Assembly: GCA_002269645.1 (NCBI GenBank)
Contig: NIVC01001252.1
Coordinates: forward strand, 154,975 to 218,974
Source of the DNA: Macrostomum lignano
Taxonomy: Eukaryota
Direction: 5' to 3'
DNA: 64,000 nucleotides
Shown here: positions 1,409 to 36,030 of the stretch, piece after piece
Layout of the letters: each line of letters begins with the position of its first letter
Position numbering within the stretch: position 1 is the stretch's first letter
Made by a program: the position numbers and the translations under genes
The notes under the pieces: model-generated
Database searches by the model: none
The model's input: only the letters and a program-made list of their open reading frames with translations
What the model was told of the DNA's origin: nothing

Positions 1409-4076
1409 TCGCCCTGTGCTGCGTGTAAGCCGGTGTTTTCATTCCGTTAGTCCGAAGAATTTCCAGAAGCTCGAAGCGGAAGGCGGAGATGTCGCCCTTG
1501 ATCTCGTTCAGGTCGTCCTCCGTGACGCCCTGCCGTTCGTCCAGCCTCTGGCGCACCATCAGGTAGCGCTTGACCAGGTCACGCATCACCGTCTGGTAGC
1601 GAGCCTCGCGCTCGTTCACGCGCTTCACCACCTTCTGCAAAACGGGGTGGGGGGGCAGAAGGTTCGAAGAATGTTGGCTAGGTGATTGTGAATGGTTGCT
1701 AGGTGATTGTGAATGGTTGCTAGGTGATTGTGAATGGTTGCTAGGTGATTGTGAATGGTTGCTAGGTGATTGTGAATGGTTGCTAGGTGATTGTGAATGG
1801 TTGCTAGGTGATTGTGAATGGTTGCTAGGTGATTGTGAATGGTTGCTAGGTGATTGTGAATGGTTGCTAGGTGATTGTGAATGGTTGCTAGGTGATTGTG
1901 AATGGTTGCTAGGTTATTGTGAATGGTTGCTAGGTGATTGTGAATGGTTGCTAGGTGATTGTGACTGGTTCACTCTCGCTCTCACCCGGATGCTCTGCCA
2001 CTTGCTCCGCTGGTGCTGCTTCGAGCAGGAGCAGAGCCGCTCCTTCGTCCAAGTCGCAATGTACAGGAAGGACTTCGGACTCGGAATGATGTTGAATGGC
2101 ACTGGCAGGGTGCCGCCCTCCTCGAAGTAGCTGATCCACAGTTTGCTGCGCGCGAATTTCCACTCCGTGTCCGCTTGCGTCTGCGGGATGGCGGCGGGTT
2201 GAAGCTGCGATGCGTGAGGGGGGCAGAGAGAGGGGGGTAGCGGGAGGGTCAGAGAAAGAGGGGTAGCGGGAGGGTCAGAGAGAGAGGGGTAGCGGGAGGG
2301 TCAGAGAGAGAGAGGGGTAGCGAGAGGGTCAGAGAGAGAGGGGTAGCGGGAGGGTCAGAGAGAGAGGGGGTAGCGAGAGGGTCAGAGAGAGAGGGGGTAG
2401 CGAGAGGGTCAGAGAGAGAGGGGTAGCGGGAGGGTCAGAGAGAGGGTTGGTTGAAGGGCCAGGCAGGGGCAGGCGGGGCTAAACTGAAGCAGTATTTGAT
2501 TTGCCTGTATAGACCACAGTATCACAGACAAAGCAAGCAGAAAAAGCAACCCAGTTTCTCATCCGTATTAATTTTTTACTAAGTCAATAAAAAACCAATC
2601 TGCATTTTTACTGCACAAAATTGCTACCAGAGCCATTTTTTCTGTCTCACTGCTTCTTCTTCGCAAGCAGACTAACTGCGGAGTAGCGGAACGGCAGACT
2701 CGGCTTGTAGCGGGCTGTGCGAACTGCGGTTTCTGCCGTGCTACTGGAGGGTCAATCGAGCAACTTTCTAGCAAGCCAACTCACTACAGATCTATTCCAC
2801 CCTTTCACCAATCCACCCACTCTTTCACCAACCCGCCTACTCTTTCATCAACCCACCCACTCTTTCACCAACCCACCCACTCTTTCACCAACCCGCCACT
2901 CTTTCACCAACCCACCCACTCACTACAGATCTATTCCACTCTTTCACCAACCCACCCACTCACTACAGATCTATTCCACTCTTTCACCAACCCACCCACT
3001 CACTACAGATCTATTCCACTCTTTCACCAACCCACCCACTCTTTCACCAACCCGCCACTCTTTCACCAACCCACCCACTCTTTCACCAACCCGCCACTCT
3101 TTCACCAACCCGCCACTCTTTCACCAAACCGCCACTCTTTCACCAACCCACCCACTCTTTCACCAACCCGCCACTCTTTCACCAGCCCGCCACTCTTTCA
3201 CCAACCCACCCACTCTTTCACCAACCCGCCTACTCTTTCACCAACCCACCCACTCACTACAGATCTATTCCACTCTTTCACCAACCCACCCGCTTCTCTA
3301 CCAACCCACCCGCTCCTCTACCAACCCACCCGCTCCTCTACCAACCCACCCACTCCTCTACCAACCCACCCACTCCTTCACCAACCCACCCACTCTTTCA
3401 CCAACCCACCCTCCTCTTTACCAACCCACCCGCTCCTCTACCAACCCACCCACTCCTTCACCAACCCACCCACTCCTTCACCAACCCACCCGCTCCTCTA
3501 CCAACCCACCCACTTCTCTACCAACCCACCCACTCCTTCACCAACCCACCCACTTCTCTACCAACCCACCCACTCCTTCACCAACCCACCCACTTCTCTA
3601 CCAACCCACCCACTCCTTCACCAACCCACCCACTTCTCTACCAACCCACCCACTCCTTCACCAACCCACCCACTTCTCTACCAACCCACCCACTCCTTCA
3701 CCAACCCACCCACTTCTCTACCAACCCACCCACTCCTTCACCAACTCACCCACTCCTTCACTAACCCACCCACTCCTTCAGTGAGCATACTTTAAGCATC
3801 TCAAAAGTCCCAATCGAGAACAGCAAAGGCAGCGGACTCACTGCAATGGACTCATAGCTGCAGTTCATCATAGCGATTAGCATATTCAGCAGCACAACAA
3901 ACGTTATCGCTGAGAAGACGCCGTACATTAGTTTGCCTGAAATTTCGAAGATTACGAGTAGTTTTAAAATTATTACGTAATTCAGTTTTATTCATTCTGT
4001 ATCTCAGCTGCTGCAAAATAAACCCAAGGCATCCAAATCTCAGTTCTTGGGGTTAAAATGTTTTGCTTCATTGCTT

Positions 4077-4139
<63 letters not shown>

Positions 4140-7100
4140 TCTCTCTCTCTCTCTCTCTGCCCCTTATCTATCTGGCACTGGAAACCCAAAGCGAACCGGG
4201 GGCGGCTGGGGTGCTAGCATGAAAATTTCGCCATTTCAACACCGAATAATACGGCTACAACCCCCCCCCCCCCTACAGCCCTGCGCCACCGACCATATTA
4301 GTTGGAAATTTGATAAATACACAGATATCAACCAGCGGAAAAGGAAAACTGGTCTTGAAAGACGCCAACAAGAAATTTCCTCTAGTAGATTATATTTTAA
4401 TAATTTCCTTGTACGAGCATTTTCTTTAGCGCGTAGGAAAGTCGGGAGTTGTTTGGTTTCAATATTTTTCCTGACTCTCAGAGATGCCTTCTGTCTGCCT
4501 CGGCTGTCTGTCTGCTCTGGCCGTTGCGACCTTCATCGCATCGCACCTGCAGCTCACTGCGGCGGTGAGTGTATGGCTGTGGTTCATATTCACAGCCTGT
4601 TTATTATATCTGGAGTTAAAGCAGAGATTTAGAATGGATTGCTAGTCTAGAGCTTACCTGGATAAAGGATTAGAATGGATTGCTAATCTATAGTCTACAT
4701 GGATAAAGGAATAGAATGGATTGCTAATCTATAGCCTACATGGATAAAGGAATAGAATGGATTGCTAATCTATAGGCTACATGAATAAAGGAATAGAATG
4801 GATTGCTAATCTATAGCCTACATGAATAAAGGAATAGAATGGATTGCTAATCTATAGGCTACATGGATAAAGGAATAGAATGGATTGCTAATCTATAGGC
4901 TACACGGATAAAGGAATAGAATGGATTGCTAATCTATAGCCTACATGAATAAAGGAATAGAATGGATTGCTAATCTATAGCCTACATGAATAAAGGATTA
5001 TGATGGATTGCTAATCTACTTCCCGCGGACATTCGAACAGAACACAAAGTTTTTTGTGCGGCTGGACCACTATGAGAACTACAATAACCAGCTGCAAGTC
5101 CATGCCCGGTGCGACAGCGGCAACGTCTGCGACCCCGCATTTGTCATTCGAGTCAGCGGCAGCTGGTGAGAATGCAACCTGTCTACTTTTAGTAGAAAGT
5201 TCTGTGCAAAATTTATAAGAATTATTTTTTGTGTAAAAGTAATTTGAAATTAATAACAGATTACAAGAATCCTTTACACAGAAAAAAGAGAATCGCTACT
5301 TTATCTCACCTAGAGAATCGCTCCTATAAGAATCTCACCTAGAGAATCGCCCCTATAAGAATCTCACCTAGAGAATCGCCCCTATAAGAATCTCACCTAG
5401 AGAATCGCTCCTATAAGAATCTCACCTAGAGAATCGCCCCTATAAGAATCTCACCTAGAGAATCGCCCCTATAAGAATCTCACCTAGAGAATCGCCCCTA
5501 TAAGAATCTCACCTAGAGAATCGCTCCTATAAGAATCTCACCTAGAGAATCGCCCCTATAAGAATCTCACCTAGAGTATCGCTCGTATTAGAATCTCACC
5601 TAGAGAATCTCTCCTTTAAGAATCTCACCCAAGAGAATCGCCCCTATAAGAATCTCACCCAAGAGAATCGCCCCTATAAGAATCTCACCCAAGAGAATCG
5701 CCCCTATAAGAATCTCACCCAAGAGAATCGCCCCTATAAGAATCTCACCCAAGAGAATCGCCCCTATAAGAATCTCACCCAAGAGAATCGCCCCTATAAG
5801 AATCTCACCCAAGAGAATCGCCCCTATAAGAATCTCACCCAAGAGAATCGCCCCTATAAGAATCTCACCCAAGAGAATCGCCTCTATTAGAATCTCACCC
5901 AAGAGAATCGCTCGTATTAGAATCTCACCCAAGAGAATCGCCCCTATAAGAATCTCACCCAAGAGAATCGCCCCTATAAGAATCTCACCCAAACTTGATC
6001 CTCAAGGGGCCGGAGCGACGCGGCATCGGACTGCATCTCCAACAAAATGCAGATCACATTCGGTGATAAAATTGGTACAAATCTGACCAATCCTCTGCAT
6101 TTCGTTGAGCAACCATCTCTGGTAATAAATCAATTCATATTTCATCTCGATAAAAACACAGTACAATATGAATTTTGATATTTTCTTAATTGTTTCAGCA
6201 TCCCGTGTTAATTCATGTCTGGATCAAGGACTGCTACATGGACAGAGCCATGGACGACATTGGCGAGTTTCACGCGCAAATAGCGCAGCTTCCCAGACCA
6301 TTTTTATTCACGGATTGGGTCGACTTTAGCGACTCGGAGCGAACGAAATCGATCGAATTGACGCCATCGCTAAACACCCCGCTATCGACCAAGTGAGCCT
6401 TGAGCTGGTGCTACTTATCTGTGTTCGAGTGGGTTTATTGGTTTACCAAAGTATCAGTTTATTGATTTATCAGTTGATAAGTTGATAAGTTTATCATTCT
6501 ATCAGTTTATCGGTCTTATCAGTTTATCGGTCTATCAGTTTATCATTCTATCAGTTTATCGGTCTTATCAGTTTATCGGTCTATCAGTTTATCATTCTAT
6601 CAGTTTATCAGTTTCTCAGTCTATCACTTTATCAGTTTATCAGCTTATCAGTTTATCAGCTTATCAGTTTATCAGCTTATCAGTTTATCAGCTTATCAGT
6701 TTATCAGCTTATCAGTTTATCAGCTTATCAGTTTATCAGCTTATCAGTTTATCAGCTTATCAGTTTATCAGCTTATCAGTTTATCAGCTTATCAGTTTAT
6801 CAGCTTATCAGTTTATCAGCTTATCAGTTTATCAGCTTATCAGTTTATCAGCTTATCAGTTTATCAGCTTATCAGTTTATCAGCTTATCAACTTGATAAA
6901 CCGACTGCTTCACCCCCTCAGGCTGCGAGTCACAGTATGGCGCCAATGTGAGCAGTTTTATTACGGCCAGGATTGCTCAAAATTCTGCCGACCCCTGCCG
7001 GGCCTGAGCTGCCACCCGGAGACTGGGGAGATGCTGAACTGCAGGGGATCCGTGTGCAACACCGGGATGGCAGCGCCCGCCACTTCTGGGCCCGCTGCAG

Positions 7101-10100
7101 CTCAGCAAACTGCTGAACCAGTGGGCGTCGCTGTGCAGTCCGACGTTAAAAAGCAGAAGGTGCTGCTTCATATCGTTTCATTTTTATGAATTGGGAGTGA
7201 CGGATAGAGTGACAGTTTGAGTGAAACTTAGTTAATGGTTAGAGTGAATCTAGAATGACCAATAGAGTGAATCTAGAAAGACCAAGAGTGAATCTAGAAT
7301 GACAGATAGAGTGGCAGATAGAGTGACAGATAGAGTGACAGATAGAGTGACAGATAGAGTGACAGATAGAGTGACAGATAGAGTGACAGATAGAGTGACA
7401 GCTAGAGTGACAGATAGAGTGACAGCTAGAGTGCTTTGGCCGATCATGTGAAGCTAGCATGGCAGACTAAATAGAAGCTCTCGAGTGCCGAATGCGATGA
7501 AGAAGGTATTGAAGAACTTTATTGAAATCCGCAGGCGCAGCAGGCCAATCTGACCCTGATAGTCACGCTGTCATGCTTGCTGGCCCTGACAACAGTCGCC
7601 GCTGCCTCCATTCTAGTCATCGTGCGCCGGTGTGTAAAGCCGAAAAAGTGAGTTGCCTCATACAGTTTGCTTTCGGTTGCTAATGGGTTCCAGTTATTAT
7701 CACAGGGAGTGAGTTGGCTGCAGGAGGGACTTGGGAAACAGGGAGTGAGGTGGGTGCATGAAAGGGGTGGGAAGAACAGGGAGTGAGGTGGGTGCATGAA
7801 AGGGGTGGGAGGAACAGGGAGTGAGGTGGGTGCATGAAAGGGGTGGGAAGAACAGGGAGTGAGGTGGGTGCATGAAAGTGGTGGGAAGAACAGGGAGTGA
7901 GGTGGGTGCATGAAAGGGGTGGGAGGAACAGGGAGTGAGGTGGGTGCAGGAGGGGGTTGGAGGAATAGGGAGTGAGGTGGGTGCAGGAGGGGGTTAGAGG
8001 AATAGGGAATGAGGTGGGTGCATGAAAGGGGTGGGACGAACAGGGAGTGAGGTGGGTGCAGGAGGGGGTTGGAGGAATAGGGAGTGAGGTGAGTTCATGA
8101 AGGGGTTGGGGGAACAGGGAATGAGGTGGGTGAAGGAGGGTTTGGAGGAACAGGGAGTGAGGTGGGTGAAGGAGGGTTTGGAGGAACAGGGAGTGAGGTG
8201 GGTGCATGAAGGGGTTGGAGGAACAGGTAGTGAGGTGGGTGCAGGAGGCGGTTGTGAGTTTTGCTCAATCAGGCCCTGAGCTGATCGAAGACCCAGCACA
8301 ATCTGTCTCTCTCCCCCATAAGGCGACCGAGCTGTCATAACCGGGCCCTGATCCCGCCCACGCACTCGATGGCTGTCGGCCTGCGAGACGCCGAGGCGGG
8401 CTCCGACCCGGCCTCTCCGCTGCAGCAGGACTTTGTCAACGGCTGCTACACCGTCCAGACGAGGCCGCTGCCGGCTCCCGGTGGCGTTGCCACTGCCACT
8501 GCAGTCGCCAGGGAGGCTCACCGCCCCGAATCGGACGTGTACGAAACCCCGGAGGAGCCTGCGCTGCTGTCCGGCGTGGCCGTCCCGCCGCCGCTGCCGG
8601 CCAGGGACAACCTGTCTGGGCAGTTCCAGCGAACTCCGCTATCAAGAAGCTTCAGCAAGCCGAATAAGTGATTGATGGAGATTTGGCAGACCGGCTGCTG
8701 AACCGGCTCGCTCGCATTGCATCATATTAGCGCTTCATTCAAAGATCGCGATGTACTTTTATGCTCAAATTTGATTGGGTGAATATTAGCGCTTAATTCA
8801 AAGATCGCGAGATACTTTTATTCTGGCATTGCATTGGATGAATATTAGCGCAACACTCAAAGATCACGATGTACTTTTATTCTGGCATTGCATTGGATGA
8901 ATATTAGCGCAACACTCAAAGATCACGATGTACTTTTATTCTGGCATTGCATTGGATGAATATTAGCGCTTAATTCAAAGATCACAATGCGCTTTTCAAA
9001 GTTCAATTTAAATTTCGGCCTTCAAATTTTATTTGCTGACAAATTGCTCATATTGATCATTGACCTTAGCTAATCAAAATTCGTTGGCCATTTTTCGTCA
9101 AGGTTAACTACTTTGTCTCGATTGTACTCTGAGTAGTCTGTTTATTTCATTCCATTCTTTCTTGTCAGCATTCGCCCCAGTAGTTAGTCGGTATGGTATA
9201 TGTACGTTGAAATATTAAAAAAAGGAATTTGATTGTTAACAAACCTGTGTACATATTCGATAATGATTTAAATTTACAGATTTCTCACAGCTTATTCTGA
9301 TTCTCACAAACTTCAACGAGTTTGATGTCAATAAGCTGTATTCTGTTAAGTAAGTATAGATTGGTTGCAGCTGTGTGCTCAGAACTCCTCTCGATAACTG
9401 AATCCATAAAAATAATAAAAAATTAAATCTGTTTATCAATGCAGGAAATGTCTATATCTATTGTTATTATTAATATTTTGTCAATAAATCTACTATGTGC
9501 ATATTGCAATATTTTAAATGCAATTTTTGTTTATAGATGCGTGCAGTGTTTATTGCATTCTCATATGCCATCGATGGTGCTTTTCTGTTTGTTAAAAGTA
9601 AAAAAAAACTTTTTGTCATTTGTGTTGCCCAAGTTATAAATTAGCAATCCATTCTATTCCTTTATCCGCGTAGGCTATAGATTAGCAATCCATTCTATTC
9701 CTTTATCCGCGTAGGCTATAGATTAGCAATCCATTCTATTCCTTTATCCGCGTAGGCTATAGATTAGCAATCCATTCTATTCCTTTATCCGCGTAGGCTA
9801 TAGATTAGCAATCCATTCTATTCCTTTATTCATGTAGCCTATAGATTAGCAATCCATTCTATTCCTTTATCCGTGTAGGCTATAGATTAGCAATCCATTC
9901 TAATCCTTTATCCATGTAGGCTAGCAATCCATTATGTCCTTAAACTATGACGGCAATAAATGACTGATTCAAAATTGTACTTGTCAGTACATGAGTACAA
10001 AAAAACAAAGGAAAACTGACAGACCCACTTACCGACAAACTCCGTGAAGGAATGCTCATACTCCAGATCCGTGTTGGATAAGTCAATGAGGCCGTAGGTG

Positions 10101-13100
10101 GACCAATACAGAGTCTGGGTGATCTCGAACAAGCTGCAGCATGGATAGAGGTGGGTCAAAAACAGTATTTTAACACTCATCATGCACTACTGTTAGTAGA
10201 CGATTCTAAGTAGTGTCAGAAAGTTCTCAGAATGCTTTCGAAGACACGACTTGAAAGCAAATTTGGGGTTTGCCAAAAATTCTCCGAGCGCAGCTGATTC
10301 TGCAAGAAGATTGTCTGCAGGGGGGGGGGCAGAGAGAAGCTGGGAAACAGAGAGATGAAGAGGCCCAGATAAAAGTGGCTTCTGGGGGGCTTTTTCGAAG
10401 CCTACCACCTCTTCTTCTCTCCAGAGTCATGGAGACCGGGAACCAGAACCTGGATTACCGACCCCTACCTGGACCTTCATCATTCTAAAGATGGAATTTA
10501 TTATAACTTTTGGTTTTGTTTGAAACAATTTCTTTCAAATTTGGGTCTCATTGTTAAGTCTAGGAGGTGGGGGTCGGCGAACTCCGGCCCGCGGCCTGTG
10601 GGCCTCTCTATCCGGCCCTCGGATCCTTTGAAATTTTACAATAGCAATCCGGCCCGCTCAAGGTTTGTGTCTCTTCTCAGCTCTCTTATCTCTTATCTTA
10701 TCTCCTCTCCTCTCCTCTCCTCTCCTCTCCTCTCCTCTCCTCTCCTCTCTTCTCCTCTCCTCTCTTCTCCTCTCTTCTCTTCTCCTCTCCTCTCCTCTCC
10801 TCTCCTCTCCTCTCCTCTCCTCTCCTCTCCTCTCCTTTCCTCTCCTCTCCTCTCCTCTCCTCTCCTCTCCTCTCCTCTCCTCTCCTCTCCTCCCTCCTCC
10901 TCTCCTCTCCTCTCCTCTCCTCTCCTCTCCTCTCCTCTCTCCTCCTCTCCTCCCTCCTTTCCTCTCTCCTCCTCTCTCCTCTCTCCTCCTCCCACTGTCA
11001 CGCAGCCATGAGCTAGATTTGCATTTGGCATTTGAGTTTCCCATCCCTGTGCTAGACTCTCGACACAAAATGTAAACAACAACCGTTTGTCGGTACATTA
11101 AGGAACTGCGGTCAAACCTGAAACTATCTGAAAGTGGGGATTAATTTAGGGAAAAGTGTTTCTTGGCCTCCATGGCCTGCGGGCTCGCCGGTAAACTTAG
11201 AATTTGTCACAGCTTCAACGCATACAGAAGTTTCCCTGCCGTTGGTTGTTTGCAGTGGCCACAGAGGCAGCCGCAGACCCACTGCAACCACGCGGAACAC
11301 ACGCAGCGCAAGGACTGGGGGTGTTGATAGACAAAAAGTTCACTACCGCAGCCTGCAGAATCTCCTTCTTTCTCCTCTGCTAGCAGCAGATTTTCAACAA
11401 ATTCTCTTCCGCTAAACAGCCGCCCAGCTGGACGGGAAAAGTGCTAATCTGTCACGACATTTATGAGAGCATCATCAATAGCCGAAATGGAAGAATTTGG
11501 GAAATTATCCCTCCTTTTTCGATTCCTAATATAGTGATTTTCAATACATATCGGAAGTGCCCCAGGGAAGAGTTTGAGACTTGGAAACCGCTTGGGAACA
11601 ACGGTGACTGCCAATACTGTTAATAACCTGATGTTCTCTTTACCAATTGGAGGGAAATTTGTTTGGTGATTGCGTCTGATGTTCGCACTCTTATTCATCT
11701 CCCTCTCCCTCTCCCTCTCCCTCTCCCTCTCCTCTCCTTCTCCCTCTCCCTCTCCCTCTCCCTCTCCCTCTCGCTCTCCCCCCTCTCTCTCTCCCTCTCT
11801 GTCTACCTCCCTCTACCTCTCCTTCTCCCTCTTCACCTCCCTCTCCCTCTCCCTCTCCCTCTCCCTCTCCCTCTCCCTCTTCACCTCCCTCTCCCTCTTC
11901 ACCTCCCTCTCCCTCTCCATCTCCCTCTCCCTCTCCCTCTCCCTCTCCCTCTCCCTCTCCCTCTCCCTCTTCACCTCCCTCTCCCTCTTCACCTCCCTCT
12001 CCCTCTCCCTCTTCACCTCCCTCTCCCTCTTCACCTCCCTCTCCCTCTCCCTCTTCACCTCCCTCTCCCTCTTCACCTCCCTCTCCCTCTCCCTCTTCAC
12101 CTCCCTCTCCCTCTTCACCTCCCTCTCCCTCTTCACCTCCCTCTCCCTCTCCCTCTCCGTCTACCTCCCTCTCCCTCTCTCTCCCCCTCTCCCTCTTCAT
12201 CTCCCTTTTCCTCTGCCTCTCCGTCTACCCCTTCCTTTCCCTTTCCCTCTGCCTCTTCCTTTTCATCTCCCTCTCCCTCTCCTCTCCCCCTGGATCTCTC
12301 TCCCTCTTCCTCTCCGCAATCTCCTTCTCCATCTCCCTGATGAAACCTTCCACTCCACCTGCATCTCACTCCCCCCAAAGGCTCACTTTGAGAAGGTGCG
12401 GCCTCTCGTGACGCAGTACTGATACTTCTCCAGATCGGAGCCGGTGATGCCGAAGCCCAGTTTCACATCTTTACAATACTTGTTCCTCTCGTACGCATAG
12501 AACCAATAGAGCTGGTTGAAGCCGCAAGCGAAGCTGCTGAGCACTAGCACAACTACAAATAGAAATTTGAGTATGTCCGACAGCATCCGGCCTAATGAGA
12601 TCTGCAGCGGGCCCAGGTGCGGGTTCACCGTGAAGATGTACACCAATTTGAGCATGGAGAATATGTTGGCCGTGGCGAACAGGCACTCAGAGATCAGGGT
12701 GGGGTCGTACGCGTCCCAGTACTGTCGGTGAATATTAGCCAGGTTGCCGTCCTGCCGCACCTGCCAACGGCCGTTTTAATAGGGATGGCTTCGAATGAGA
12801 TTCCAACGGTTAGCTGAGGCTTGGTGACAGGCTTTAAGAGAGAGAGAGAGAGAGAGAGTAGAATAGCTAGTGTGTGGGGAAAATGCAGATTGGGGGAAAG
12901 AGAGTGAGAAGTAGAGAGTGAAAGAAGAGGGGAAGGGGAAGAGAGGTAGGAGATAGGGAGCGAGTGAGAGGGAGAGGGTGAGAGGGGAGGGTGAGAGGGA
13001 GAGGGTGAAAGGGAGAGGGTGAGAGGGAGAGGGTGAGAGGGAGAGGGTGAGGGAGAGGGTGAGAGGGAGAAGGTGAGAGGGAGAGGGTGAGGGTGAGAGG

Positions 13101-19700: not shown

Positions 19701-22700
19701 ACAGGCGCGCTAAACAGCTCCACCGACAATCGCGGTTGTAAAGCCTCAGGTAAATGGGATTTATTGTACTATAAGTACAAATTATTGCCGCAGGCTGGGG
19801 TAAACTGGGTTTGGGCCTTTTAGGGCCAATTGGGGGCAGTCAAGTCAGGCTTTTTGCCTCAAGGGCCAACTGCTGCAGCTAGTCAGGCTCCTGGCTTCTA
19901 GTAGGCGAAATAGAAGATGATAGGCTAAGACTTTTGGAGACAGCTGACTGCCTGCCCCCCCCCCCGATATCTGCGGCTGGTTGCTGCGGGGTGGGGAGTG
20001 CACACATCAGTCAGAGCAGGCTGCCTTGTCTGGTGAAGGCATCTGTCACAGTTAACTCTCCTCTCCTCTCTCCTCTCCCTCCGTTCCTAATATTCGCATT
20101 TTCAAGAAGATAAAAGACCAGACCAGCGCCCAACCCCCCCCCCCCCACGGCTCGACTTGAATATGATGAAGCCATATATTCAATAGCTCGTATAATATTG
20201 TATATGAGATATGCATAATCTATATTAACATACAGTGGTTTCAAGACCCGCTGTCACTCCGCTAGACAGATAATGAAAAAATCGAGAATAAGGAGGAGAG
20301 AGAGAGAGAGAGGAGAAGAGTGACAGCGGCTGAGCTGTGTGTCAATACAGAAGCCCCTGACAGGCGGGCACACGGTTAGGCTGGGCACTGATATTGGGGA
20401 AAAAATTGCCACAAGATGGCACCTATGTACCATTAAACTACTGCCTTTCTGTAGTTCAGAAAGCCCACTCATTAAAATTCATGTGCCTATCTTTGTGTAC
20501 AATCTGTGTACAATTGCTCTCATTAATTGCTCTCGTTAATAAGACAAGCAGAAATTTTTAGCAAGTGACAGACTTAATGTATACTTGTACAAAAAAGAGT
20601 ACAAGATTACAAGAAGTTTATTTAGGTTAATGTTTGTGTAGTATTATTGCTTGTTTTACTTGTTAACTAGCTTGTAAGTTAGTAAGTTAAATAATTTTAC
20701 GATTTCTAACATTACAAATTGTTTACATTTAAATACTCAGAAACAGCATGGGTTTTATAGAAAAATTTCGAAATAACTATATTCTTTTTGTGTAGCAAGT
20801 TCCTCAAATATTAACCAGAACTACATGCATTTCTGCAATAATATTGCAAGGTACGCTCGTATTAGCATATAAAGTAGCAAAAGTATGAAAGCTTTCTACA
20901 GTACGGGAGCTTGCAAAAATTTTAGTATTTTAAATTTATAGGGTCCTTTGAATACTACTTTACTGTAAGACTAACAACCACTGCCATTTCTTTTACCAGT
21001 AAAGCAGAAAACCGAGTTACCGGGATTAAATGTGGTGGCTGTTGTAAGCAACCACGGCGCGCAAAAGATTTTGGCCAAACTCAGCATGGTGCGCTGGCAG
21101 GCTGTACCGTGACCACGTTTTGGCAAAATCAGAGTGAACACTCTCCACTGCTTGCTCGCTGCAGCTGCCAAGCGCTTGCCCTGTCCGCCGGCAGAACTCT
21201 CCAACATGGCAAAAGACAACGTGAACTTTTGGGGTGACAGGTAAGCTTAAGCTCATGTAGGCCAGTCGAAAATTCTCAATTGCCTCTTCAAAGTCTGCCG
21301 CCAATTCGGTTCCAAAGGCGCTGCTGACCAGCCGATCGAACGCCATCAGACACGCCCCGTACGGCTGTAATGGTGGAGGCAGATCAGCGTGAAGCTGCGG
21401 TGATTTGCGGAGCAGCTGGCGGCAGGCGTTTCCTTCCATCATGCCACCTCTGTAATCAGCTCGAATAATGCCATGCTGATGAGCCCACTCGAACGCGCGA
21501 TTCGCACCCCAAGCTTCGTTGAGCTTGTCCAGCAGTCGGTTGCTGACTCCAAGGAGCAGGTGCAGCTCAGGTGGCGGCAGAAGCATCAAAACTTCTTTGT
21601 CATCATCGCCTGGTAGCAGTGGCATGTTGACACAGTTTTTAAAGTTCTTTGCCTTTGCACGAACTTGGCCAGCTGCTTGAAACTGCTGAGCAAACTGCCG
21701 AATTCTCCCAAGAGTTCTTGGCACACCATTTTCTGTAAGAGGAGCCAGAGCTTCGCAATAGGGGCACGGATGTGTACAGGAATGAGGTTGCAGTCCGCAG
21801 ATGATGTTTGCAACTTTCATATCTGCAGTGACTGGGATTTGAAGTTCGTTGACAGCGATCGCCTCTAGCAGAGCCTGAATATTTCCGTAAGTCTCAGGAA
21901 CGTCGTTGACGATCGCAAGCAACAGGATCTTCTTGACACCCGTGTCACAGAATTTCCTGCTGTTGGCTCCTCGAGTTCCGATTTCGGGTTTTGCGTTAGA
22001 GCCAATTATCGAAACGCAAACTTTAAAAAATCCGCCGCCACCATCGAGACCCAGCAGACAGTGAAAATCATTGAAACTGCGTTGCTGAGCAACATGTGCA
22101 ATGAGTTTGACCGAGTCGTTGCAGACAACAGTCGGGCGGCAAATAGTGTCGGCTGTTGCGGCAGTCGAGGTCAGCTCCGAGAACTGGAGATTCTGGATGT
22201 CGAAGTAATCCTCTAATGCTCGATTTTGCTGTACCAAAATTTTCTTCAAGTTTGACTCGACTGCACGAGATGAGCTCGCGCCAGCACGAAGCACTTGAGC
22301 AGCCTGTAGCACTTGATTGTTGCTCAGATTCAGAGTTGTTTTCAAGTGCATCATAGTGTCCGTCCTCGTTGGAGGAAAGCTCGCACTGCTGTTTTGAGCA
22401 ACATGCACAGCAACTCGAATCGGATGGCCGCCTCGATGTCTGGCCAGAGTGATCGAATTCGAATCCGCCGTCGACCCACCCGTCTTTTCGGCAATGCAGT
22501 TGCTGGCCAGCATCTCCCTTGTCCTTGGGCTGACTGTTTGCTCAATGTTAGTCACCTTAGCTGTCGAGTTGCATTTGTGCTGTTTGCCACGCCCAACTGG
22601 AGAATGACAGTATGAGCAGGAAAGCACAGCCGTTGCTCCTTCAGCTGGTGCTGGGGATCTTTCGCGTGGTCGACCAGGTGGGGCTCGAGCAGGACCTGTT

Positions 22701-25700
22701 GTGTAAGGCGTCTTTGGATCGCTGCCTTTGTGGTGATTGCCACGAGCCATTTCGCACAGTTGGCAGTTGCAATCCGGTCTGCTTCTGGTGGCTGGAGGCA
22801 GACTCTTCATGTCGGCTATTATCTTCTCGTAATCTGGTCGCGGTGGCAGAGCACGAGGCGTCAGACTTCTTAGTGACGATAAAACGCGCCTGCAGCCCTG
22901 GCAAACTCCTTCAGGTAGAAAGTGCCGCACTGCCTCGTAGTCCTGGAACAAGTCGGCTGCCACGGATTCGAAATTAGAGCAAGAAGAAATCAGCGCAGAA
23001 GCTCGTCTCAAGCAGAGCAGGCACAAACTTTGCCTGTTCTCGTTATGAGTTTTTTTTGTCGTTGGCATTGTAGACAGTACAAGCTATGCAAACAACTCTT
23101 TCAGTTCAGGCACTCGCTTGTTTTAGATCAAATAGAACTAGATCAAACCTTTATAAGTAAATTGAGCAGTATGATAACCAAGTTAACGCACCTGGCAGAA
23201 ATATTACAAAGCAATTATAGATAAGATACTACTGTGTTATTACTATTGATAAATTCCTCTTTATGACTGCAATTATAAGGCATAAGCTACCTGTGGTGCA
23301 GCGTTTTATTGCTCAAGCAGATATGGGGCAATATTTACTCCCAAAGTCCTTTGTGGTCTATTCATAATTATCATCTGATTAGCAAAAATTCTATTAGAGC
23401 AATAAAATATTTTGTTTTAAAGTGTACCGAAACATATAGTGCCATACACAGCAAAGATAGGCACATGAATTTTAATGAGTGGGCTTTCCAAACTACAGAA
23501 AGGCAGTAGTTTAATGGCACATAGGTGCCGTCTTGTGGCAATTTTTTCCTCAATATCAGTGCCCAGCCTAACCGTGGGCAGTGTCCCCCAGCTACCGTTC
23601 AGGCTGGGCTCATCTTCGTGTATTGAGAGCGCGCAAACTCTCACGCAAATTCCTTCCAGATCTGTAGCCGAATCAATCCAATCAGTCCTGTCAATCTAAT
23701 CAACCTGTCAATCCAATATAAATGTCAATCTAATCAACCTGTCAATCCAATCAAACTGTCAATCCAATCAAACTGTCAATCTATTCAAACTGTCAATCTA
23801 ACCAAACTGTCAATATATTCAAACTGTCAATCTAATCAAACTGTCAATCCAATCAAACTGTCAATCCAATCAAACTGTCAATCCAATCAAACTGTCAATC
23901 TAATCAAACTGTCAATCTAATCAAACTGTCAATCTAATCAAACTGTCAATCCAATCAAACTGTCAATCCAATCAAACTGTCAATCTAATCAAACTGTCAA
24001 TCCAATCAAACTGTCAATCTATTCAAACTGTCAATCTAATCAAACTGTCAATCTAATCAAACTGTCAATCTAATCAAACTGTCAATCTAATCAAACTGTC
24101 AATCTAATCAAACTGTCAATCTAATCAAACTGTCAATCTAATCAAACTGTCAATCTAATCAAACTGTCAATCTAATCAAACTGTCAATCTAATCAATCTG
24201 TCAATCTAATCAACCTGTCAATCTAATCAAACCTGTCAATCTAATCAAACTGCCAATCTATCAACAATGTCACAAGAGACAAAGAGTTGAAATTCAAGAA
24301 AACTAACAAGCTTTATCTTAATTTTATCGCAACAATTAGAATACTTAATCCGCAGCATCTGAAAAGTGCAGCGACAAAGGAAATCGAACCCCAGACCTTC
24401 AGAGGCGCTCTATCAATTTGAATCCGCTCTCCGACTCTGAACGAGACGGGCAGCAAAAAGAGAGGAAAAGTAGCATATAATTAGGAGGCGGAATCGCTCA
24501 TAATTATTTAAATTGGCGCCGGGATGCAAATTGGAGGGGATTTTTTTCCGGAGCTGGAGGGGAAGAAAGCGAGGACGGAAGCGAATTCCTTGGGACAGCC
24601 GCGCAGTTCTGATTGCAACGCTGCTCCATCAGTCCAAATCCTACAGCCTCCGACTCGACTTCCCTTTTTCGGCCAGTGCAAAGGGTTGTGCAGAAAATTG
24701 CCGAGGAGCAAAGAGTAGCCACTGACTGAGGCTGCAGGCTGGCATAATAAATCGCTTCATCTTGGACTTTGGGATGCTGGAGACTGGAATACAGCAAACA
24801 GTACAGTTTCCTAAGGCAGCCTACGACTGCTCAATCATATTCTTCAGGTCAGAGGTCAAAAGAGTACAAGCTCGCGATAAAAGTGCTAATACGAGCACAG
24901 TTTATCTGTACGCTTCTGGGAAAGAATATAAATATGTAAATATTTTATTAAAAACATAGACCGAATGTATGAGCATTCTTGAGCCCTAACCCTAATCCTC
25001 AGTACCCTCCAAACCCTCTGCCCTACACATTCTACATGCACTCCACAGCCTCCGTACACTCCTGACCTTGAATGCTCTCTTCACCCCTATACCCTCCGCA
25101 CCCTCTGCACCCTCCGCACCCTCCGCTTCCATGGCTCATCATCGCGGATCCTCACCTTCTTCTGCTTGTATTTAATCGCCAGCTTCAATCTGGACAGAGT
25201 CATCCGTTCTTCATCAGTCTCTTCCAGCGCCTTCTCGTTCACCTTGTGGCCGCTCTGGCCGATGTCCTGGTTGAGCACGATAGCCAGCTCAGCGGAACTG
25301 CGGGTCTGCTCCAGCAGGGCGGAGGCGTACTCCTGGCACTTGGCGGCCAACTGCTCGTACTCGCTCTTGAACTCGTTCTCCAGCCTCCCTAGTCGCTTCA
25401 TCTCCCAGCTGAGCTCGAAGGCGGTCAGAATTGGATCCTTGCTAGACAGGCAGATCAAGGAGGGACTCGCCAGGGCTTTGTAGGCGTTGATTCGCGACTT
25501 GGAGTGCCGCAGGCTGTCCTCCTTCTGCGCCAGCACGCACTCGTCGCAGGCGCAGCGCAGCTCGTGCGGCTTGGGCACGCGGTCGCCGCGGTCCAGCAGG
25601 ATCTTCAGGATCTCGTAGTTGTCGATATGAGCGGCCAGGATGATGGGCGTGATGTCCGGGGTGAAGCTGCTGGACGGCACCGCGCCCATGGGGCCCTGCA

Positions 25701-32485: not shown

Positions 32486-33229
32486 AGGTCCCCCTAACTG
32501 AGCAAAGCATTACCTGGACCAGCGCTCGAGCGCATCAACTCAGAGCGACAGGAGTAAAGTCAGCAACAGACTGGCATGCCTCCTTGATCTGAACTCGGTA
32601 GTCCTCTCCGGCTGTCCTCTCGTCCTTGCCAATAACTCGATATTGATTGACTGACAGTTTTATAATGACGATCCCGATCCGCCTTGGCCAACGTCTTCTG
32701 TCTCTAGCTCTCTCTCTCTCTCTCTTGGTCTCTCTTACTCTCTTTTTCAACTATACGCTTAATCGTCTCTTATTCGTTCCTATATTATACTGTCTAGTGG
32801 CGGGCCAAATCCCCTCTAAAGCTTTTTGTCTCTTTGGAAATTTTTAGCCGCTGCTGCTGACTCGCCTTGGCAAAGAACGGGCGCAGCTGCCCCTCCCGCT
32901 CTCTCTCTCTCTCTTCGCTGATCTGTGCACCCCGACGCACAAGGGTGGGTTGGTCAGTGTTGGCGACCAATGGCAAATCTGGACTGCAATACGGTAACCT
33001 CATTGGCTTACTATTCACTGTTTTAGTTTATTCAATGCCACCTCCCTCCCCACTTCTGACTGGCAGGTTTCAGTTTCTCTGTTCTGTGCTGGGCCTTCTG
33101 TTCAATCCTCGCTGCGGATCACTTGGACCCGGCTTATTTGTCTGGCGTCCTTTCGAATCGGGGAGATGCAGACGGCAGACAGGAGTGCAAGGGAGAGGAG
33201 AAATGGGAAGCGGAAAGATGGGGGAGACG

Positions 33230-36030
33230 GTGCATGGGAGAAGGTGGAGAGGAGAGGGTGGAGAGGAGAGGGTGGAGAGGAGATGGTGGAGAGGAGAGGG
33301 TGGAGAGGACAGGGTGGAGAGGAGAGGGTGAAGAGGAGAGGGTGGAGAGGAGAGGGTGGAGAGGAGAGGGTGGAGAGGAGAGGGTGGAGAGGAGAGGGTG
33401 GAGAGGAGAGGGTGGAGAGGAGAGGGTGGAGAGGAGAGGGTGGAGAGGAGAGGGTGGAGAGGAGAGGGTGAAGAGGAGAGGGTGGAGAGGAGAGGGTGGA
33501 GAGGAGAGGGTGGAGAGGAGAGGGTGGAGAGGAGAGGGTGGAGAGGAGAGGGTGGAGAGGAGAGGGTGGAGAGGAGAGGGTGGAGAGGAGAGGGTGGAAA
33601 GGAGAGGGTGGAGAGGAGACGGTGGAGAGGACAGGGTGGAGAGGAGAGGATGAAGAGGAGAGGGTGGAGAGGAGAGGGTGGAGAGGAGAGGGTGGAGAGG
33701 AGATGGTGGAAAGGAGAGGGTGGAGAGGAGATGGCGGAGAGGAGAGGGTGGAGAGGAGATGGCGGAAAGGAGAGGGTGGAGAGGAGAGGTTGGAGAGGAG
33801 ACGGTGGAGAGGAGAGGTTGGAGAGGAGAGGGTGGAGAGGAGAGGTTGGAGAGGAGAGGGTGGAGAGGAGAGGGTGGAGAGGAGATGGCGGAAAGGAGAG
33901 GGTGGAGAGGAGAGGTTGGAGAGGAGAGGGTGGAGAGGAGAGGGTGGAGAGGAGAGGGTGGAGAGGAGAGGGTGGAGAAGAGATGGCGGAAAGGAGAGGT
34001 TGGAGAGGAGAGGTTGGAGAGGAGAGGTTGGAGAGGAGAGGGTGGAGAGGAGAGGGTGGAGAGGAGAGGGTGGAGAGGAGAGGGTGGAGAGGAGAGGGTG
34101 GAGAGGAGAGGGTGGAGAGGAGAGGGTGGAGAGGAGAGGGTGGAGAGGAGATGGTGGAGAGGAGATGGTGGAGAGGACAGGGTGGAGAGGAGAGGGTGAA
34201 GAGGAGAGGGTGGAGAGGAGAGGGTGGAGAGGAGAGGGTGGAGAGGAGAGGGTGGAGAGGAGAGGGTGGAGAGGAGAGGGTGGAGAGGAGAGGGTGGAGA
34301 GGAGAGGGTGGAAAGGAGAGGGTGGAGAGGAGAGGGTGGAGAGGAGAGGGTGGAAAGGAGAGGGTGGAGAGGACAGGGTGGAGAGGAGAGGGTGGAGAGG
34401 AGAGGGTGGAGAGGAGAGGGTGGAGAGAAGAGGGTGGAGAGGAGAGGGTGGAGAGGAGAGGGTGGAGAGGAGAGGGTGGAGAGGAGAGGGTGAAGAGGAG
34501 AGGGTGAAGAGGAGAGGGTGGAGAGGAGAGGGTGGAGAGGAGAGGGTGGAGAGGAGAGGGTGGAGAGGAGAGGGTGGAGAGGAGAGGGTGGAAAGGAGAG
34601 GGTGGAGAGGAGACGGTGGAGAGGACAGGGTGGAGAGGAGAGGATGAAGAGGAGAGGGTGGAGAGGAGAGGGTGGAGAGGAGAGGGTGGAGAGGAGATGG
34701 TGGAAAGGAGAGGGTGGAGAGGAGATGGCGGAGAGGAGAGGGTGGAGAGGAGATGGCGGAAAGGAGAGGGTGGAGAGGAGAGGTTGGAGAGGAGAGGGTG
34801 GAGAGGAGAGGTTGGAGAGGAGAGGGTGGAGAGGAGAGGTTGAAGAGGAGAGGGTGGAGAGGAGAGGGTGGAGAGGAGAGGGTGGAGAGGAGAGGGTGGA
34901 GAGGAGATGGCGGAAAGGAGAGGGTGGAGAGGAGAGGTTGGAGAGGAGAGGGTGGAGAGGAGAGGGTGAAGAGGAGAGGGTGGAGAGGAGAGGGTGGAGA
35001 AGAGATGGCGGAAAGGAGAGGTTGGAGAGGAGAGGTTGGAGAGGAGAGGTTGGAGAGGAGAGGGTGGAGAGGAGAGGGTGGAGAGGAGAGGGTGGAGAGG
35101 AGAGGGTGGAGAGGAGAGGGTGGAGAGGAGAGGGTGGAGAGGAGAGGGTGGAGAGGAGAGGGTGGAGAGGAGATGGTGGAGAGGAGATGGTGGAGAGGAC
35201 AGGGTGGAGAGGAGAGGGTGAAGAGGAGAGGGTGGAGAGGAGAGGGTGGAGAGGAGAGGGTGGAGAGGAGAGGGTGGAGAGGAGAGGTTGGAGAGGAGAG
35301 GGTGGAGAGGAGAGGGTGGAGAGGAGAGGGTGGAAAGGAGAGGGTGGAGAGGAGACGGTGGAGAGGACAGGGTGGAGAGGAGAGGATGAAGAGGAGAGGG
35401 TGGAGAGGAGAGGGTGGAGAGGAGAGGGTGGAGAGGAGATGGTGGAAAGGAGAGGGTGGAGAGGAGATGGCGGAGAGGAGAGGGTGGAGAGGAGATGGCG
35501 GAAAGGAGAGGGTGGAGAGGAGAGGTTGGAGAGGAGAGGGTGGAGAGGAGAGGTTGGAGAGGAGAGGGTGGAGAGGAGATGGTGGAGAGGAGATGGCGGA
35601 AAGGAGAGGGTGGAGAGGAGAGGTTGGAGAGGAGAGGGTGGAGAGGAGAGGGTGGAGAGGAGAGGGTGGAGAGGAGAGGGTGGAGAAGAGATGGCGGAAA
35701 GGAGAGGTTGGAGAGGAGAGGTTGGAGAGGAGAGGGTGGAGAGGAGAGGGTGGAGAGGAGAGGGTGGAGAGGAGAGGGTGGAGAGGAGAGGGTGGAGAGG
35801 AGAGGGTGGAGAGGAGAGGGTGGAGAGGAGATGGCGGAAAGGAGAGGGTAGAGAGGAGATGGCGGAAAGGAGAGGGTGGAGAGGAGAGGTTGGAGAGGAG
35901 AGGGTGGAGAGGAGATGGTGGAGAGGAGAGGGTGGAGAGGAGAGGGTGGAGAGGAGATGGTGGAGAGGAGACGGTGGAGAGGAGATGGTGGAGAGGAGAT
36001 GGTGGAGAGGAGACGGTGGAGAGGAGACGG
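33230..36030. repeat. 2.8-kb polypurine 14-bp satellite (GGAGAGGAGAGGGT) with higher-order repeats
   Basis: About 200 units; diagnostic variant blocks recur at about 33590, 34590 and 35330. Confidence 0.96.

What the first reader, a model, noticed from the sequence alone, without database searches (positions are those of the whole stretch)
4484..8671. Hidden EGF-less Delta-like (DSL) membrane protein gene nested antisense inside a TRPC intron
Seen: seven exons, mostly missed or fragmented in the ORF track, splice in phase into a 404-aa protein. Its layout is signal peptide, MNNL/C2-like region, DSL, a short Ala/Pro stalk, TM helix and cytoplasmic tail. All six DSL cysteines are present. The C3-C4 loop is shortened (RPLPGLS, lacking the RDD-FGH motif), and the C5-C6 segment (RGSV) lacks the conserved GW-G. 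Known: Delta/Serrate ligands carry several EGF repeats between DSL and TM, and even nematode DSL ligands keep at least one. Seen: the tail has Tyr motifs ([14 protein letters not shown]) and PPPLPAR, with no C-terminal PDZ motif. Inference: this may be a non-canonical Notch ligand, a cis-inhibitor or decoy, or a DSL-fold receptor that signals into its own cell through SH2/SH3 partners.
Basis: partly seen in the sequence, partly recalled or inferred. Interest (0 to 1): 0.8.

Follow-up and report, generated by a model that had tools for sequence, protein, structure and literature searches.

The report
EGF-less Delta-like gene in a flatworm
The seven-exon gene is real and encodes a flatworm (Macrostomum lignano) membrane protein descended from the Notch ligand Delta that has lost all its EGF repeats, but it is already in GenBank, proteins of this layout are known elsewhere, and its function is untested.

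Summary
Seven GT-AG exons (4484-8671, + strand) splice in frame into a 404-aa type I membrane protein. It lies antisense inside an intron of a TRPC channel gene. The window is Macrostomum lignano.

The gene is not hidden. The protein is identical to GenBank PAA70297.1 (Mlig019093g1), which UniProt names 'DSL domain-containing protein'. That annotation was built from assembled RNA-seq transcripts.

Two further genomic copies are intact, with dN/dS of about 0.3. A 36%-identical paralogue (Mlig006308g1) is also EGF-less.

The whole ectodomain is homologous to M. lignano's own EGF-bearing Delta-like protein (hhalign 98.9%). The first four introns sit at the same positions and phases in all three genes. 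So this is a lineage-specific Delta derivative that lost its EGF repeats.

Its DSL keeps six cysteines but only 2 of the 5 residues of the known Notch-binding face, and it scores below Pfam's cut-off. Three tail motifs (NxxY, VYExP, PPLPxR) are shared with the parental Delta-like protein.

EGF-less DSL proteins are already reported in a sponge (AmqDelta4) and in bivalves.

The most likely role is a weak or non-activating modulator of Notch signalling, as with DLL3. This is inferred, not shown.

The parts
4484..4564 (+). Exon 1: start codon and signal peptide (residues 1-27)
   Evidence: hydropathy. An AG preceded by a pyrimidine tract lies 2 nt upstream of the ATG.
5041..5165 (+). Exon 2: first strands of the C2/MNNL-like domain, including the conserved CDSGxxCDP
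   Evidence: The paralogue has an exon of the same length (125 nt) and the same end phase.
6007..6121 (+). Exon 3: C2/MNNL-like domain, middle part (conserved NPL)
6199..6392 (+). Exon 4: C2/MNNL-like domain, last part (conserved LPRPFL)
6922..7159 (+). Exon 5: last C2 strand, DSL domain (6947-7057, C181-C217) and Ala/Pro stalk
   Evidence: The stalk follows the DSL within this exon and no EGF is encoded.
7535..7647 (+). Exon 6: transmembrane helix and basic stop-transfer (residues 252-289)
   Evidence: AF2 helix 242-285
8323..8671 (+). Exon 7: cytoplasmic tail with NxxY (328-331), [10 protein letters not shown] (356-365), PPLPAR (378-383), and the stop codon
3937..10032 (-). Host intron of the TRPC gene, containing the whole DSL gene
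   Evidence: With the acceptor at 3937 the frame is kept only by a GC donor at 10032.
3842..3936 (-). TRPC exon encoding S6 ([31 protein letters not shown])
10033..10131 (-). TRPC exon encoding the pore region ([18 protein letters not shown]...FTEFV). The 5' end of this exon is approximate.
4630..8243 (.). Five separate minisatellite arrays in introns 1, 2, 4, 5 and 6: 4630-5018, 5303-5992, 6452-6890, 7240-7433, 7702-8243
   Evidence: Array lengths differ between genomic copies.

Best explanation
This is an expressed, selectively maintained Macrostomum lignano gene (Mlig019093g1). It encodes a type I membrane protein that descends from a flatworm Delta-like Notch ligand and has lost every EGF repeat. 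What remains is the ligand 'head' (an N-terminal C2/MNNL-like beta-sandwich plus a shortened DSL), about 35 residues of Ala/Pro stalk, a TM helix, and the ancestral Delta-like cytoplasmic tail with its NxxY, VYExP and PPLPxR docking motifs.

The DSL has lost three of the five residues of the Notch-binding face, and the EGF1-3 region that adds Notch contacts in Jagged-type ligands is gone. I therefore think it most likely acts as a weak or non-activating member of the ligand family. It would bind or compete at the Notch ligand-binding region, or act in cis, and tune signalling by the full-length Delta-like ligands, much as mammalian DLL3 does. Its trafficking would be driven by the inherited tail motifs.

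Shown: the gene structure, the descent from Delta, the loss of EGF, purifying selection, and motif conservation. Inferred: any Notch binding, cis-inhibition, and tail partners.

Confidence that it is a genuine EGF-less Delta derivative is about 0.9. Confidence in the Notch-modulator mechanism is about 0.4. The single figure given (0.5) is for the statement as a whole.
For: Identity and expression:
- The protein is identical to GenBank PAA70297.1.
- GenBank models for this assembly are transcriptome-derived (PMC5730564).

Descent from Delta:
- BLASTP against M. lignano Delta-like Mlig028312g1 (DSL plus EGFs by Pfam) gives 29% identity over residues 8-196, E=1e-15.
- hhalign of the EGF-less subfamily against Delta-like N-termini gives 98.9% probability, E=1.5e-17, over 185 columns.
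- A profile of the EGF-less subfamily alone hits only Notch-ligand DSLs in the PDB. Fly Delta scores E=2.3e-5, followed by Jagged-2, DLL4 and Jagged-1.
- Introns 1-4 share position and phase (0,2,0,2) in this gene, the paralogue and the EGF-bearing Delta-like gene.
- Foldseek on two low-confidence AF2 models returns only C2 domains plus Jagged1, Jagged2 and DLL1 C2-DSL structures.

Loss of EGF is real:
- Pfam finds no EGF at E<=10.
- No EGF-like cysteine pattern occurs in any frame of the host intron.
- The paralogue Mlig006308g1 is also EGF-less, and its DSL passes the Pfam cut-off at 26.7 bits.

Selection:
- Three copies are intact, with dN/dS 0.28-0.30 and binomial p of 8e-4 to 8e-3.

Tail inherited:
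- The invariant islands N328/Y331, R356-P365 and P378-R383 are shared with the paralogue.
- NPVY, YSYNEP and PPPLPPRP occur in the EGF-bearing Delta-like tail.

Degraded binding face:
- Of hJAG1 F199/R201/R203/D205/F207 (PMC3415683), only F193 and R195 remain.

Precedent for a divergent-DSL, non-activating ligand: DLL3 (PMC2171428).
Against: - No binding, expression-pattern or phenotype data exist. I found none of the gene IDs in searchable papers or in three supplement sets.
- Pfam MNNL gives no hit and DSL is below the gathering score.
- The AF2 models are low confidence (pLDDT 48-52), so the structural support is weak.
- With most of the binding face gone, the protein may not bind Notch at all.
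- Cytoplasmic lysines, needed for Mib1/Neuralized-type ligand activation, are few and not conserved: 5 here and 1 in the paralogue. This fits 'non-activating' but equally fits 'not in the pathway'.
- No orthologue outside M. lignano was found among 1.84 billion representative proteins, so conservation cannot be judged beyond this species.
Confidence: 0.5

Rival explanations
1. It is a Notch-independent surface receptor or adhesion molecule. The C2-DSL head has been re-used for another partner (lipid or protein). The protein signals into its own cell through phospho-Tyr (VYETP, NxxY) and Pro-rich (PPLPAR) motifs that recruit SH2, PTB and SH3 adaptors.
For: - Three of the five Notch-face residues are lost and the C5-C6 GWxG is missing.
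- The tail motifs are the most conserved part of an otherwise diverged tail.
- PxxPxR and pYxxP fit class II SH3 and Crk/Nck/Abl-type SH2 consensus motifs (established knowledge, not tested here).
- Notch-ligand C2 domains are known to bind lipid (PMC3888931 and PMC5538765, by title and abstract).
Against: - The same three tail motifs occur in the EGF-bearing Delta-like protein. They are therefore inherited ligand-tail features, not a new receptor module.
- No kinase, partner or phosphorylation evidence exists.
- The F-C-R-P part of the DSL face and the YYG motif are kept.
Confidence: 0.25
2. It is a fully functional, minimal trans-activating Notch ligand. C2 plus DSL carry the whole primary interface, as in the DLL4-Notch1 complex, so the EGF repeats are dispensable here.
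For: - In Delta-type ligands the Notch EGF11-12 contacts lie in the MNNL/C2 and DSL domains (established knowledge from the DLL4-Notch1 structure; 4xlw is among the hits).
- The EGF-less AmqDelta4 exists in a sponge.
- NxxY could drive endocytosis, and so the pulling force.
- The gene is under purifying selection.
Against: - The equivalents of R203, D205 and F207 are missing, and these residues are needed for both trans-activation and cis-inhibition in Jagged/Serrate (PMC3415683).
- DSL is below the Pfam cut-off.
- There are few cytoplasmic lysines for Mib1/Neuralized-dependent activation, and they are not conserved in the paralogue.
Confidence: 0.15
3. It is a decaying duplicate or transcribed relic with no function of its own, for example a truncated Delta copy that landed in a TRPC intron.
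For: - It is lineage-restricted.
- The DSL is degenerate.
- It sits in a repeat-filled intron.
Against: - Three copies keep an intact 404-codon ORF and all 12 splice sites, with dN/dS of about 0.3.
- A 36%-identical paralogue keeps the same architecture, cysteines and tail motifs at a different, non-nested locus.
- Transcript-based annotation exists.
Confidence: 0.05

Closest known systems
Macrostomum lignano Delta-like protein Mlig028312g1 (PAA91973.1, 548 aa)
   Same: - The signal peptide, C2/MNNL-like domain and DSL are homologous (29% identity over residues 8-196; hhalign 98.9%).
- Introns 1-4 are at the same positions and phases.
- The tail has NPxY, YxxEP and PPPLPxR in the same order.
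   Different: - It has about 5 EGF / Ca-binding EGF repeats between the DSL and the TM helix.
- Its C3-C4 loop is long, with an R-S-D...GH motif, and its DSL scores 39.6 bits.
- It has an intron inside the DSL that the window gene lacks.
Paralogue Mlig006308g1 (P0014, 421 aa, 'DSL domain-containing protein')
   Same: - The same EGF-less architecture.
- 36-41% identity in the ectodomain, with the same extra cysteines.
- Short DSL loops.
- Tail motifs NPAY, RPDSGVYEEP and PPLPAR.
- The same first four introns.
   Different: - A Ser/Thr-rich (mucin-like) stalk instead of an Ala/Pro stalk.
- Its DSL passes the Pfam cut-off at 26.7 bits.
- It keeps the intra-DSL intron.
- It is not nested in another called gene.
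AmqDelta4 of the sponge Amphimedon queenslandica
   Same: It is described as a membrane-bound Delta with MNNL, DSL and TM domains but no EGF repeats (PMC3482393; PMC10970066).
   Different: It is an independent lineage and no sequence relationship was tested here. Its DSL is reported as conserved, and its tail is unrelated as far as is known.
DSL-only / tandem-DSL genes of bivalves (PMC8166818) and the tandem-DSL protein P0010
   Same: - EGF-less DSL proteins.
- P0010 has short C3-C4 loops (FCEPVPGKYSC) that resemble [10 protein letters not shown] here.
   Different: - They have several DSL units in tandem.
- The 279-aa P0010 sequence consists almost entirely of the DSL repeats.
- The organism of P0010 is unknown.
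Mammalian DLL3
   Same: It is a Delta-family member with a divergent DSL. It does not activate Notch in trans and attenuates signalling cell-autonomously (PMC2171428). This is the functional analogy I favour.
   Different: DLL3 keeps six EGF repeats, so the analogy is functional only. No specific orthology exists.
C. elegans DSL-1 and other short nematode DSL ligands
   Same: They are reduced DSL ligands that lack a recognisable MNNL by profile and have minimal EGF content.
   Different: They keep at least one EGF (PMC3415683), and DSL-1 is secreted rather than membrane-anchored.

Membership tests
Delta/Serrate/LAG-2 (DSL) Notch ligands | Type I membrane protein with an N-terminal signal peptide and a single TM helix | tested here: met
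   Hydrophobic segments at residues 1-24 and 254-283, followed by RRCVKPKKR. AF2 predicts helices at 3-22 and 242-285.
Delta/Serrate/LAG-2 (DSL) Notch ligands | N-terminal MNNL domain recognised by Pfam PF07657 | tested here: not met
   No MNNL hit at E<=10. The EGF-bearing M. lignano Delta-like protein also has no MNNL hit at E<=1, so the profile is insensitive in this lineage.
Delta/Serrate/LAG-2 (DSL) Notch ligands | N-terminal C2-type beta-sandwich homologous to the ligand N-terminus | tested here: met
   - hhalign 98.9%, E=1.5e-17 over residues 21-213 against Delta-like N-termini.
- BLASTP E=1e-15.
- Shared intron positions and phases.
- Foldseek returns only C2 domains plus Jagged1, Jagged2 and DLL1, although the models are low confidence.
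Delta/Serrate/LAG-2 (DSL) Notch ligands | DSL domain: six cysteines and a match to the DSL profile (PF01414) | tested here: inconclusive
   - Six cysteines are present with the YYG and KFCRP motifs.
- Pfam gives 17.2 bits against a cut-off of 24.2 and matches only positions 1-16 of 46.
- The subfamily profile hits the fly Delta DSL at E=2.3e-5.
- The paralogue passes the cut-off at 26.7 bits.
- UniProt names the protein 'DSL domain-containing'.
Delta/Serrate/LAG-2 (DSL) Notch ligands | Conserved Notch-binding face of the DSL (hJAG1 F199, R201, R203, D205, F207) | tested here: not met
   Only F193 and R195 are retained. The R203 position is Leu, and the D205 and F207 positions fall in the 4-residue deletion of the C3-C4 loop.
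Delta/Serrate/LAG-2 (DSL) Notch ligands | EGF repeats (including DOS-type EGF1-2) between the DSL and the TM helix | tested here: not met
   - No EGF family at E<=10.
- The 36 residues between C217 and the TM helix contain no cysteine.
- No EGF-like cysteine pattern in any frame of window 3992-9934.
- The transcript-derived GenBank CDS is identical.
Delta/Serrate/LAG-2 (DSL) Notch ligands | Binds Notch EGF11-12 and activates or cis-inhibits the receptor | not testable with these tools
   This needs binding and reporter assays.
Delta/Serrate/LAG-2 (DSL) Notch ligands | Cytoplasmic tail with lysines and motifs for Mindbomb/Neuralized-dependent endocytosis | not tested
   There are five tail lysines (286, 288, 289, 401, 404) and one in the paralogue. 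No Mib1 or Neuralized motif model was available.
TRPC channels (host gene) | Ankyrin repeats, TRP_2 domain and a six-TM pore domain with TRPC-type sequence | tested here: met
   - Concatenated minus-strand exons hit TRPgamma at E=2.4e-92 and TRPC5/4 at about 1e-83.
- Pfam TRP_2 at 1e-29 and Ank_2 on the upstream exons.
- The other genomic copy has a called minus-strand Ion_trans gene spanning the DSL gene.

The most novel reading that the evidence does not exclude
The C2-DSL head without EGF repeats defines a Macrostomum-specific class of minimal Delta derivatives with one of two functions. Either they are self-sufficient minimal Notch ligands or cis-inhibitors, which would show that the EGF repeats are dispensable for ligand function. 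Or they have left the Notch pathway and act as receptors that signal through the conserved NxxY / VYExP / PPLPxR tail.
Probability: 0.2. Interest if true: 0.65.

Novelty: new member of a known kind. Interest (0 to 1): 0.35.

Why it matters
It is a natural experiment on what the EGF repeats of Notch ligands are for. A flatworm used as a stem-cell and regeneration model keeps, under purifying selection, two paralogous Delta derivatives that consist only of the C2-DSL head, a short stalk and the ancestral tail.

If they still act on Notch, they would define the minimal ligand or cis-inhibitor module. If they do not, they show how a ligand head can be re-used for another purpose.

M. lignano has transgenesis and RNAi, so either possibility can be tested directly.

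As a genome-scan result it is modest. The gene is already annotated, EGF-less DSL proteins have precedents, and nothing here shows a new mechanism.

Tried and rejected
- Pfam with the single protein gave only a sub-threshold partial DSL match and no MNNL.
- Word-indexed homologue searches found only M. lignano proteins. The third search, with an ectodomain profile, returned a single metagenomic protein, so no deep alignment could be built.
- The exhaustive HMMER search gave 7 hits. One of them, P0008, is a bacterial repeat protein that matches the tail by composition only, and I rejected it.
- P0002, P0007 and P0015 first looked like odd paralogues, including a 'DSL-less' one. They are older mis-predicted or frame-shifted models of the same two loci. 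The GenBank model P0014 restores the DSL.
- Two AlphaFold runs on 6-sequence alignments gave low confidence (pLDDT 48 and 52). Trimming to the ectodomain did not help.
- Expression data: the gene IDs were absent from the full text of the paper library and from the supplements of three M. lignano papers.
- A hidden EGF exon was rejected after a six-frame scan of the host intron.
- A pseudogene reading was rejected on the dN/dS values and the intact copies.

Full report
**1. What is in the sequence**

Window 4484-8671 on the + strand contains seven open segments. They join through canonical AG...GT boundaries at these coordinates:
- 4484-4564
- 5041-5165
- 6007-6121
- 6199-6392
- 6922-7159
- 7535-7647
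- 8323-8671

The joined sequence is 1215 nt, giving 404 codons plus a stop.

The protein has the following parts:
- an N-terminal hydrophobic signal sequence
- a region of about 150 residues rich in beta strands
- a six-cysteine DSL-like segment (C181, C190, C194, C202, C212, C217)
- a cysteine-free Ala/Pro stalk (residues 218-253)
- a TM helix (254-283) followed by RRCVKPKKR
- a 120-residue tail

**2. Origin and annotation status**

The protein is 100% identical to GenBank PAA70297.1, 'hypothetical protein BOX15_Mlig019093g1' of Macrostomum lignano. UniProt (A0A267FAX1) names it 'DSL domain-containing protein'.

Two further 404-aa copies, 97% identical, are annotated on other contigs of the same assembly: Mlig032942g1 and Mlig014464g1. 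This fits the known duplicated state of this genome.

The GenBank annotation of that assembly was produced only from RNA-seq-based, genome-guided transcript assemblies, with ORFs called by TransDecoder (PMC5730564). The identical CDS therefore means that a transcript with these six junctions, and without extra exons, was assembled.

So the gene is real and expressed, but it is not hidden in the public record. I could not map reads myself.

**3. Context**

Minus-strand open segments around the gene encode a TRPC channel:
- Concatenated, they hit Drosophila TRPgamma at E=2.4e-92 and TRPC5/TRPC4 at about 1e-83.
- Exons further upstream carry TRP_2 and ankyrin repeats.

The DSL gene lies wholly inside the intron between the pore exon (ending at 10033) and the S6 exon (starting at 3936). 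With that acceptor, the TRPC frame is kept only if the donor is GC at 10032 (GCAAGT), which makes this a probable GC-AG intron.

The same nesting is annotated in a second copy.

**4. Is it a Delta relative?**

The direct Pfam test is weak. DSL scores 17.2 bits against a cut-off of 24.2 and matches only the first 16 profile positions. There is no MNNL and no EGF.

Homology is nevertheless firm, on five lines of evidence:
- (a) The best PDB sequence hits are fly Delta and Jagged-1. A profile of the EGF-less subfamily alone hits only Notch-ligand DSLs, with fly Delta at E=2.3e-5.
- (b) An exhaustive search of 1.84 billion representatives finds M. lignano's own Delta-like protein, aligned over residues 8-197 at E=2e-5. 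Pairwise BLASTP to its GenBank model Mlig028312g1 gives 29% identity, E=1e-15. That protein has a Pfam-significant DSL and several EGF/EGF_CA repeats.
- (c) hhalign of the EGF-less subfamily against Delta-like N-termini gives 98.9% probability, E=1.5e-17, over 185 columns. That span covers the whole pre-DSL domain and the DSL.
- (d) Exact spliced alignment shows that the first four introns lie at homologous positions with the same phases (0, 2, 0, 2) in three genes: the window gene, its paralogue, and the EGF-bearing Delta-like gene.
- (e) Two AlphaFold models are low confidence (pLDDT 48 and 52). Foldseek against the PDB still returns only C2 domains and, as the multi-domain matches, Jagged-1 (5uk5, 4cbz), Jagged-2 (5mwf) and DLL1 (4xbm).

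I treat (e) as weak corroboration only.

**5. The EGF-less state is genuine and maintained**

- The 36 residues between the last DSL cysteine and the TM helix have no cysteine.
- No EGF-like cysteine pattern exists in any of the six frames of the host intron.
- A paralogue at another, non-nested locus (Mlig006308g1, 421 aa, 36-41% identical) has the same layout. Its stalk is Ser/Thr-rich and its DSL passes Pfam's cut-off.
- In that paralogue and in the EGF-bearing gene, a phase-1 intron splits the DSL between C5 and C6. In the paralogue the next exon runs straight into the stalk and TM helix, whereas in the Delta-like gene it runs into EGF1.
- The three near-identical copies all keep the ORF and the splice sites.
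- Pairwise dN/dS is 0.28-0.30, with a significant deficit of non-synonymous changes (p = 8e-4 to 8e-3). Introns are 90-96% identical, against 97.5% for exons.

**6. What the sequence says about mechanism**

The residues of the Jagged/Serrate DSL face needed for both trans-activation and cis-inhibition are F199, R201, R203, D205 and F207 (PMC3415683). Here only the first two are kept (F193, R195). The rest are replaced or removed by the shortened C3-C4 loop, and the GWxG before C6 is gone. The paralogue is similarly reduced.

A tandem-DSL protein of unknown origin (P0010) has very similar short loops (FCEPVPGKYSC), so this short-loop form of DSL recurs elsewhere.

In the tail, conservation between the paralogues is concentrated in three islands: N328-x-x-Y331, R356-P-x-S-x-V-Y-E-x-P365 and P378-P-L-P-A-R383. 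The EGF-bearing Delta-like tail has NPVY, YSYNEP and PPPLPPRP in the same order.

The tail is therefore inherited from the ligand ancestor rather than invented. From general knowledge, the motifs fit PTB (NxxY), SH2 (pYxxP) and class II SH3 (PxxPxR) ligands. That reading is inference.

Cytoplasmic lysines are few and not conserved.

**7. Most likely function**

Taken together, this is a Delta derivative that keeps the receptor-facing head and the ancestral trafficking and adaptor tail. It has a degraded Notch face and no EGF1-3. The best fit is a weak or non-activating modulator of Notch signalling. The functional analogy is DLL3, a divergent-DSL ligand that does not activate Notch and attenuates signalling in cis (PMC2171428). 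I give this about 0.4.

The rivals are:
- a Notch-independent receptor (0.25)
- a minimal but fully active ligand (0.15)
- a functionless relic (0.05)

**8. Novelty**

AmqDelta4 of Amphimedon lacks EGF repeats (PMC3482393; PMC10970066). A bivalve-specific clade of DSL-only and tandem-DSL genes has also been reported (PMC8166818).

I found no paper that mentions this gene. No orthologue outside M. lignano appeared in the searched databases.

It is thus an uncharacterised, lineage-restricted new member of a known kind (reduced Delta-like proteins). It is of moderate interest for the evolution of Notch ligands, and it is testable in a tractable flatworm.

Noticed in passing
window 4630-5018, 5303-5992, 6452-6890, 7240-7433, 7702-8243, 8724-8996: Every intron of the DSL gene except the 77-bp intron 3 carries its own unrelated minisatellite, with periods of 41, 30, 8/16, 12/24 and 38 bp. 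A 59-bp array lies just 3' of the stop. Array length differs between genomic copies: intron 1 is 476 bp here and 929 bp in L001.
   Followed up: partly
window 10023-10033 and 3936-3938 (minus strand): The TRPC intron that hosts the DSL gene keeps the reading frame only with a GC donor (G|GCAAGT at 10032). The nearby GT at 10024 would break the frame. This is a probable GC-AG intron.
   Followed up: partly
window 21026-23068 (minus strand): An intact, intronless 680-aa ORF lies inside another TRPC intron, on the same strand as TRPC. It has no Pfam hit and its N-terminus is Cys-rich. It may be a domesticated or mobile-element protein.
   Followed up: partly
window 49645-52148 (+ strand): An LTR-retrotransposon pol region with RVT_1, RT_RNaseH, Integrase_H2C2 and rve domains. 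It is split over two overlapping reading frames (49645-50820 and 50673-52148), so it is frameshifted. It sits in the most GC-rich part of the window (up to 0.69).
   Followed up: partly
window 41138-41668 and 42173-42730 (+ strand): Exons of a CEP76 homologue: the CEP76 C2 domain (E=3e-30) and the CEP76 peptidase-like domain (E=4e-20).
   Followed up: partly
window 33102-36161: A roughly 3-kb minisatellite with extreme strand asymmetry (GC skew 0.97 and AT skew 0.56 in 34001-36000). It produces spurious ORFs of up to 1019 aa on both strands.
   Followed up: no
window 4466-4486: A pyrimidine tract and an AG (tttttcctgactctcAG) end 2 nt before the ATG. This could be a spliced-leader trans-splice acceptor, since 39% of M. 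lignano genes are trans-spliced according to PMC5730564.
   Followed up: no
P0010 (ENA-derived protein, 279 aa; no locus fetched): A protein made of six tandem DSL units. Five have the same short C3-C4 loop type (FCEPVPGKYSC) as the window protein, and only the last has the canonical RDDEFGH loop. The source organism is unknown.
   Followed up: partly
P0002, P0007, P0015 (UniProt entries from the older M. lignano assembly): These are older gene models of the same two loci. They are frame-shifted or skip the DSL exon, and they carry misleading automatic names ('VASt domain-containing', 'CUB domain-containing').
   Followed up: yes
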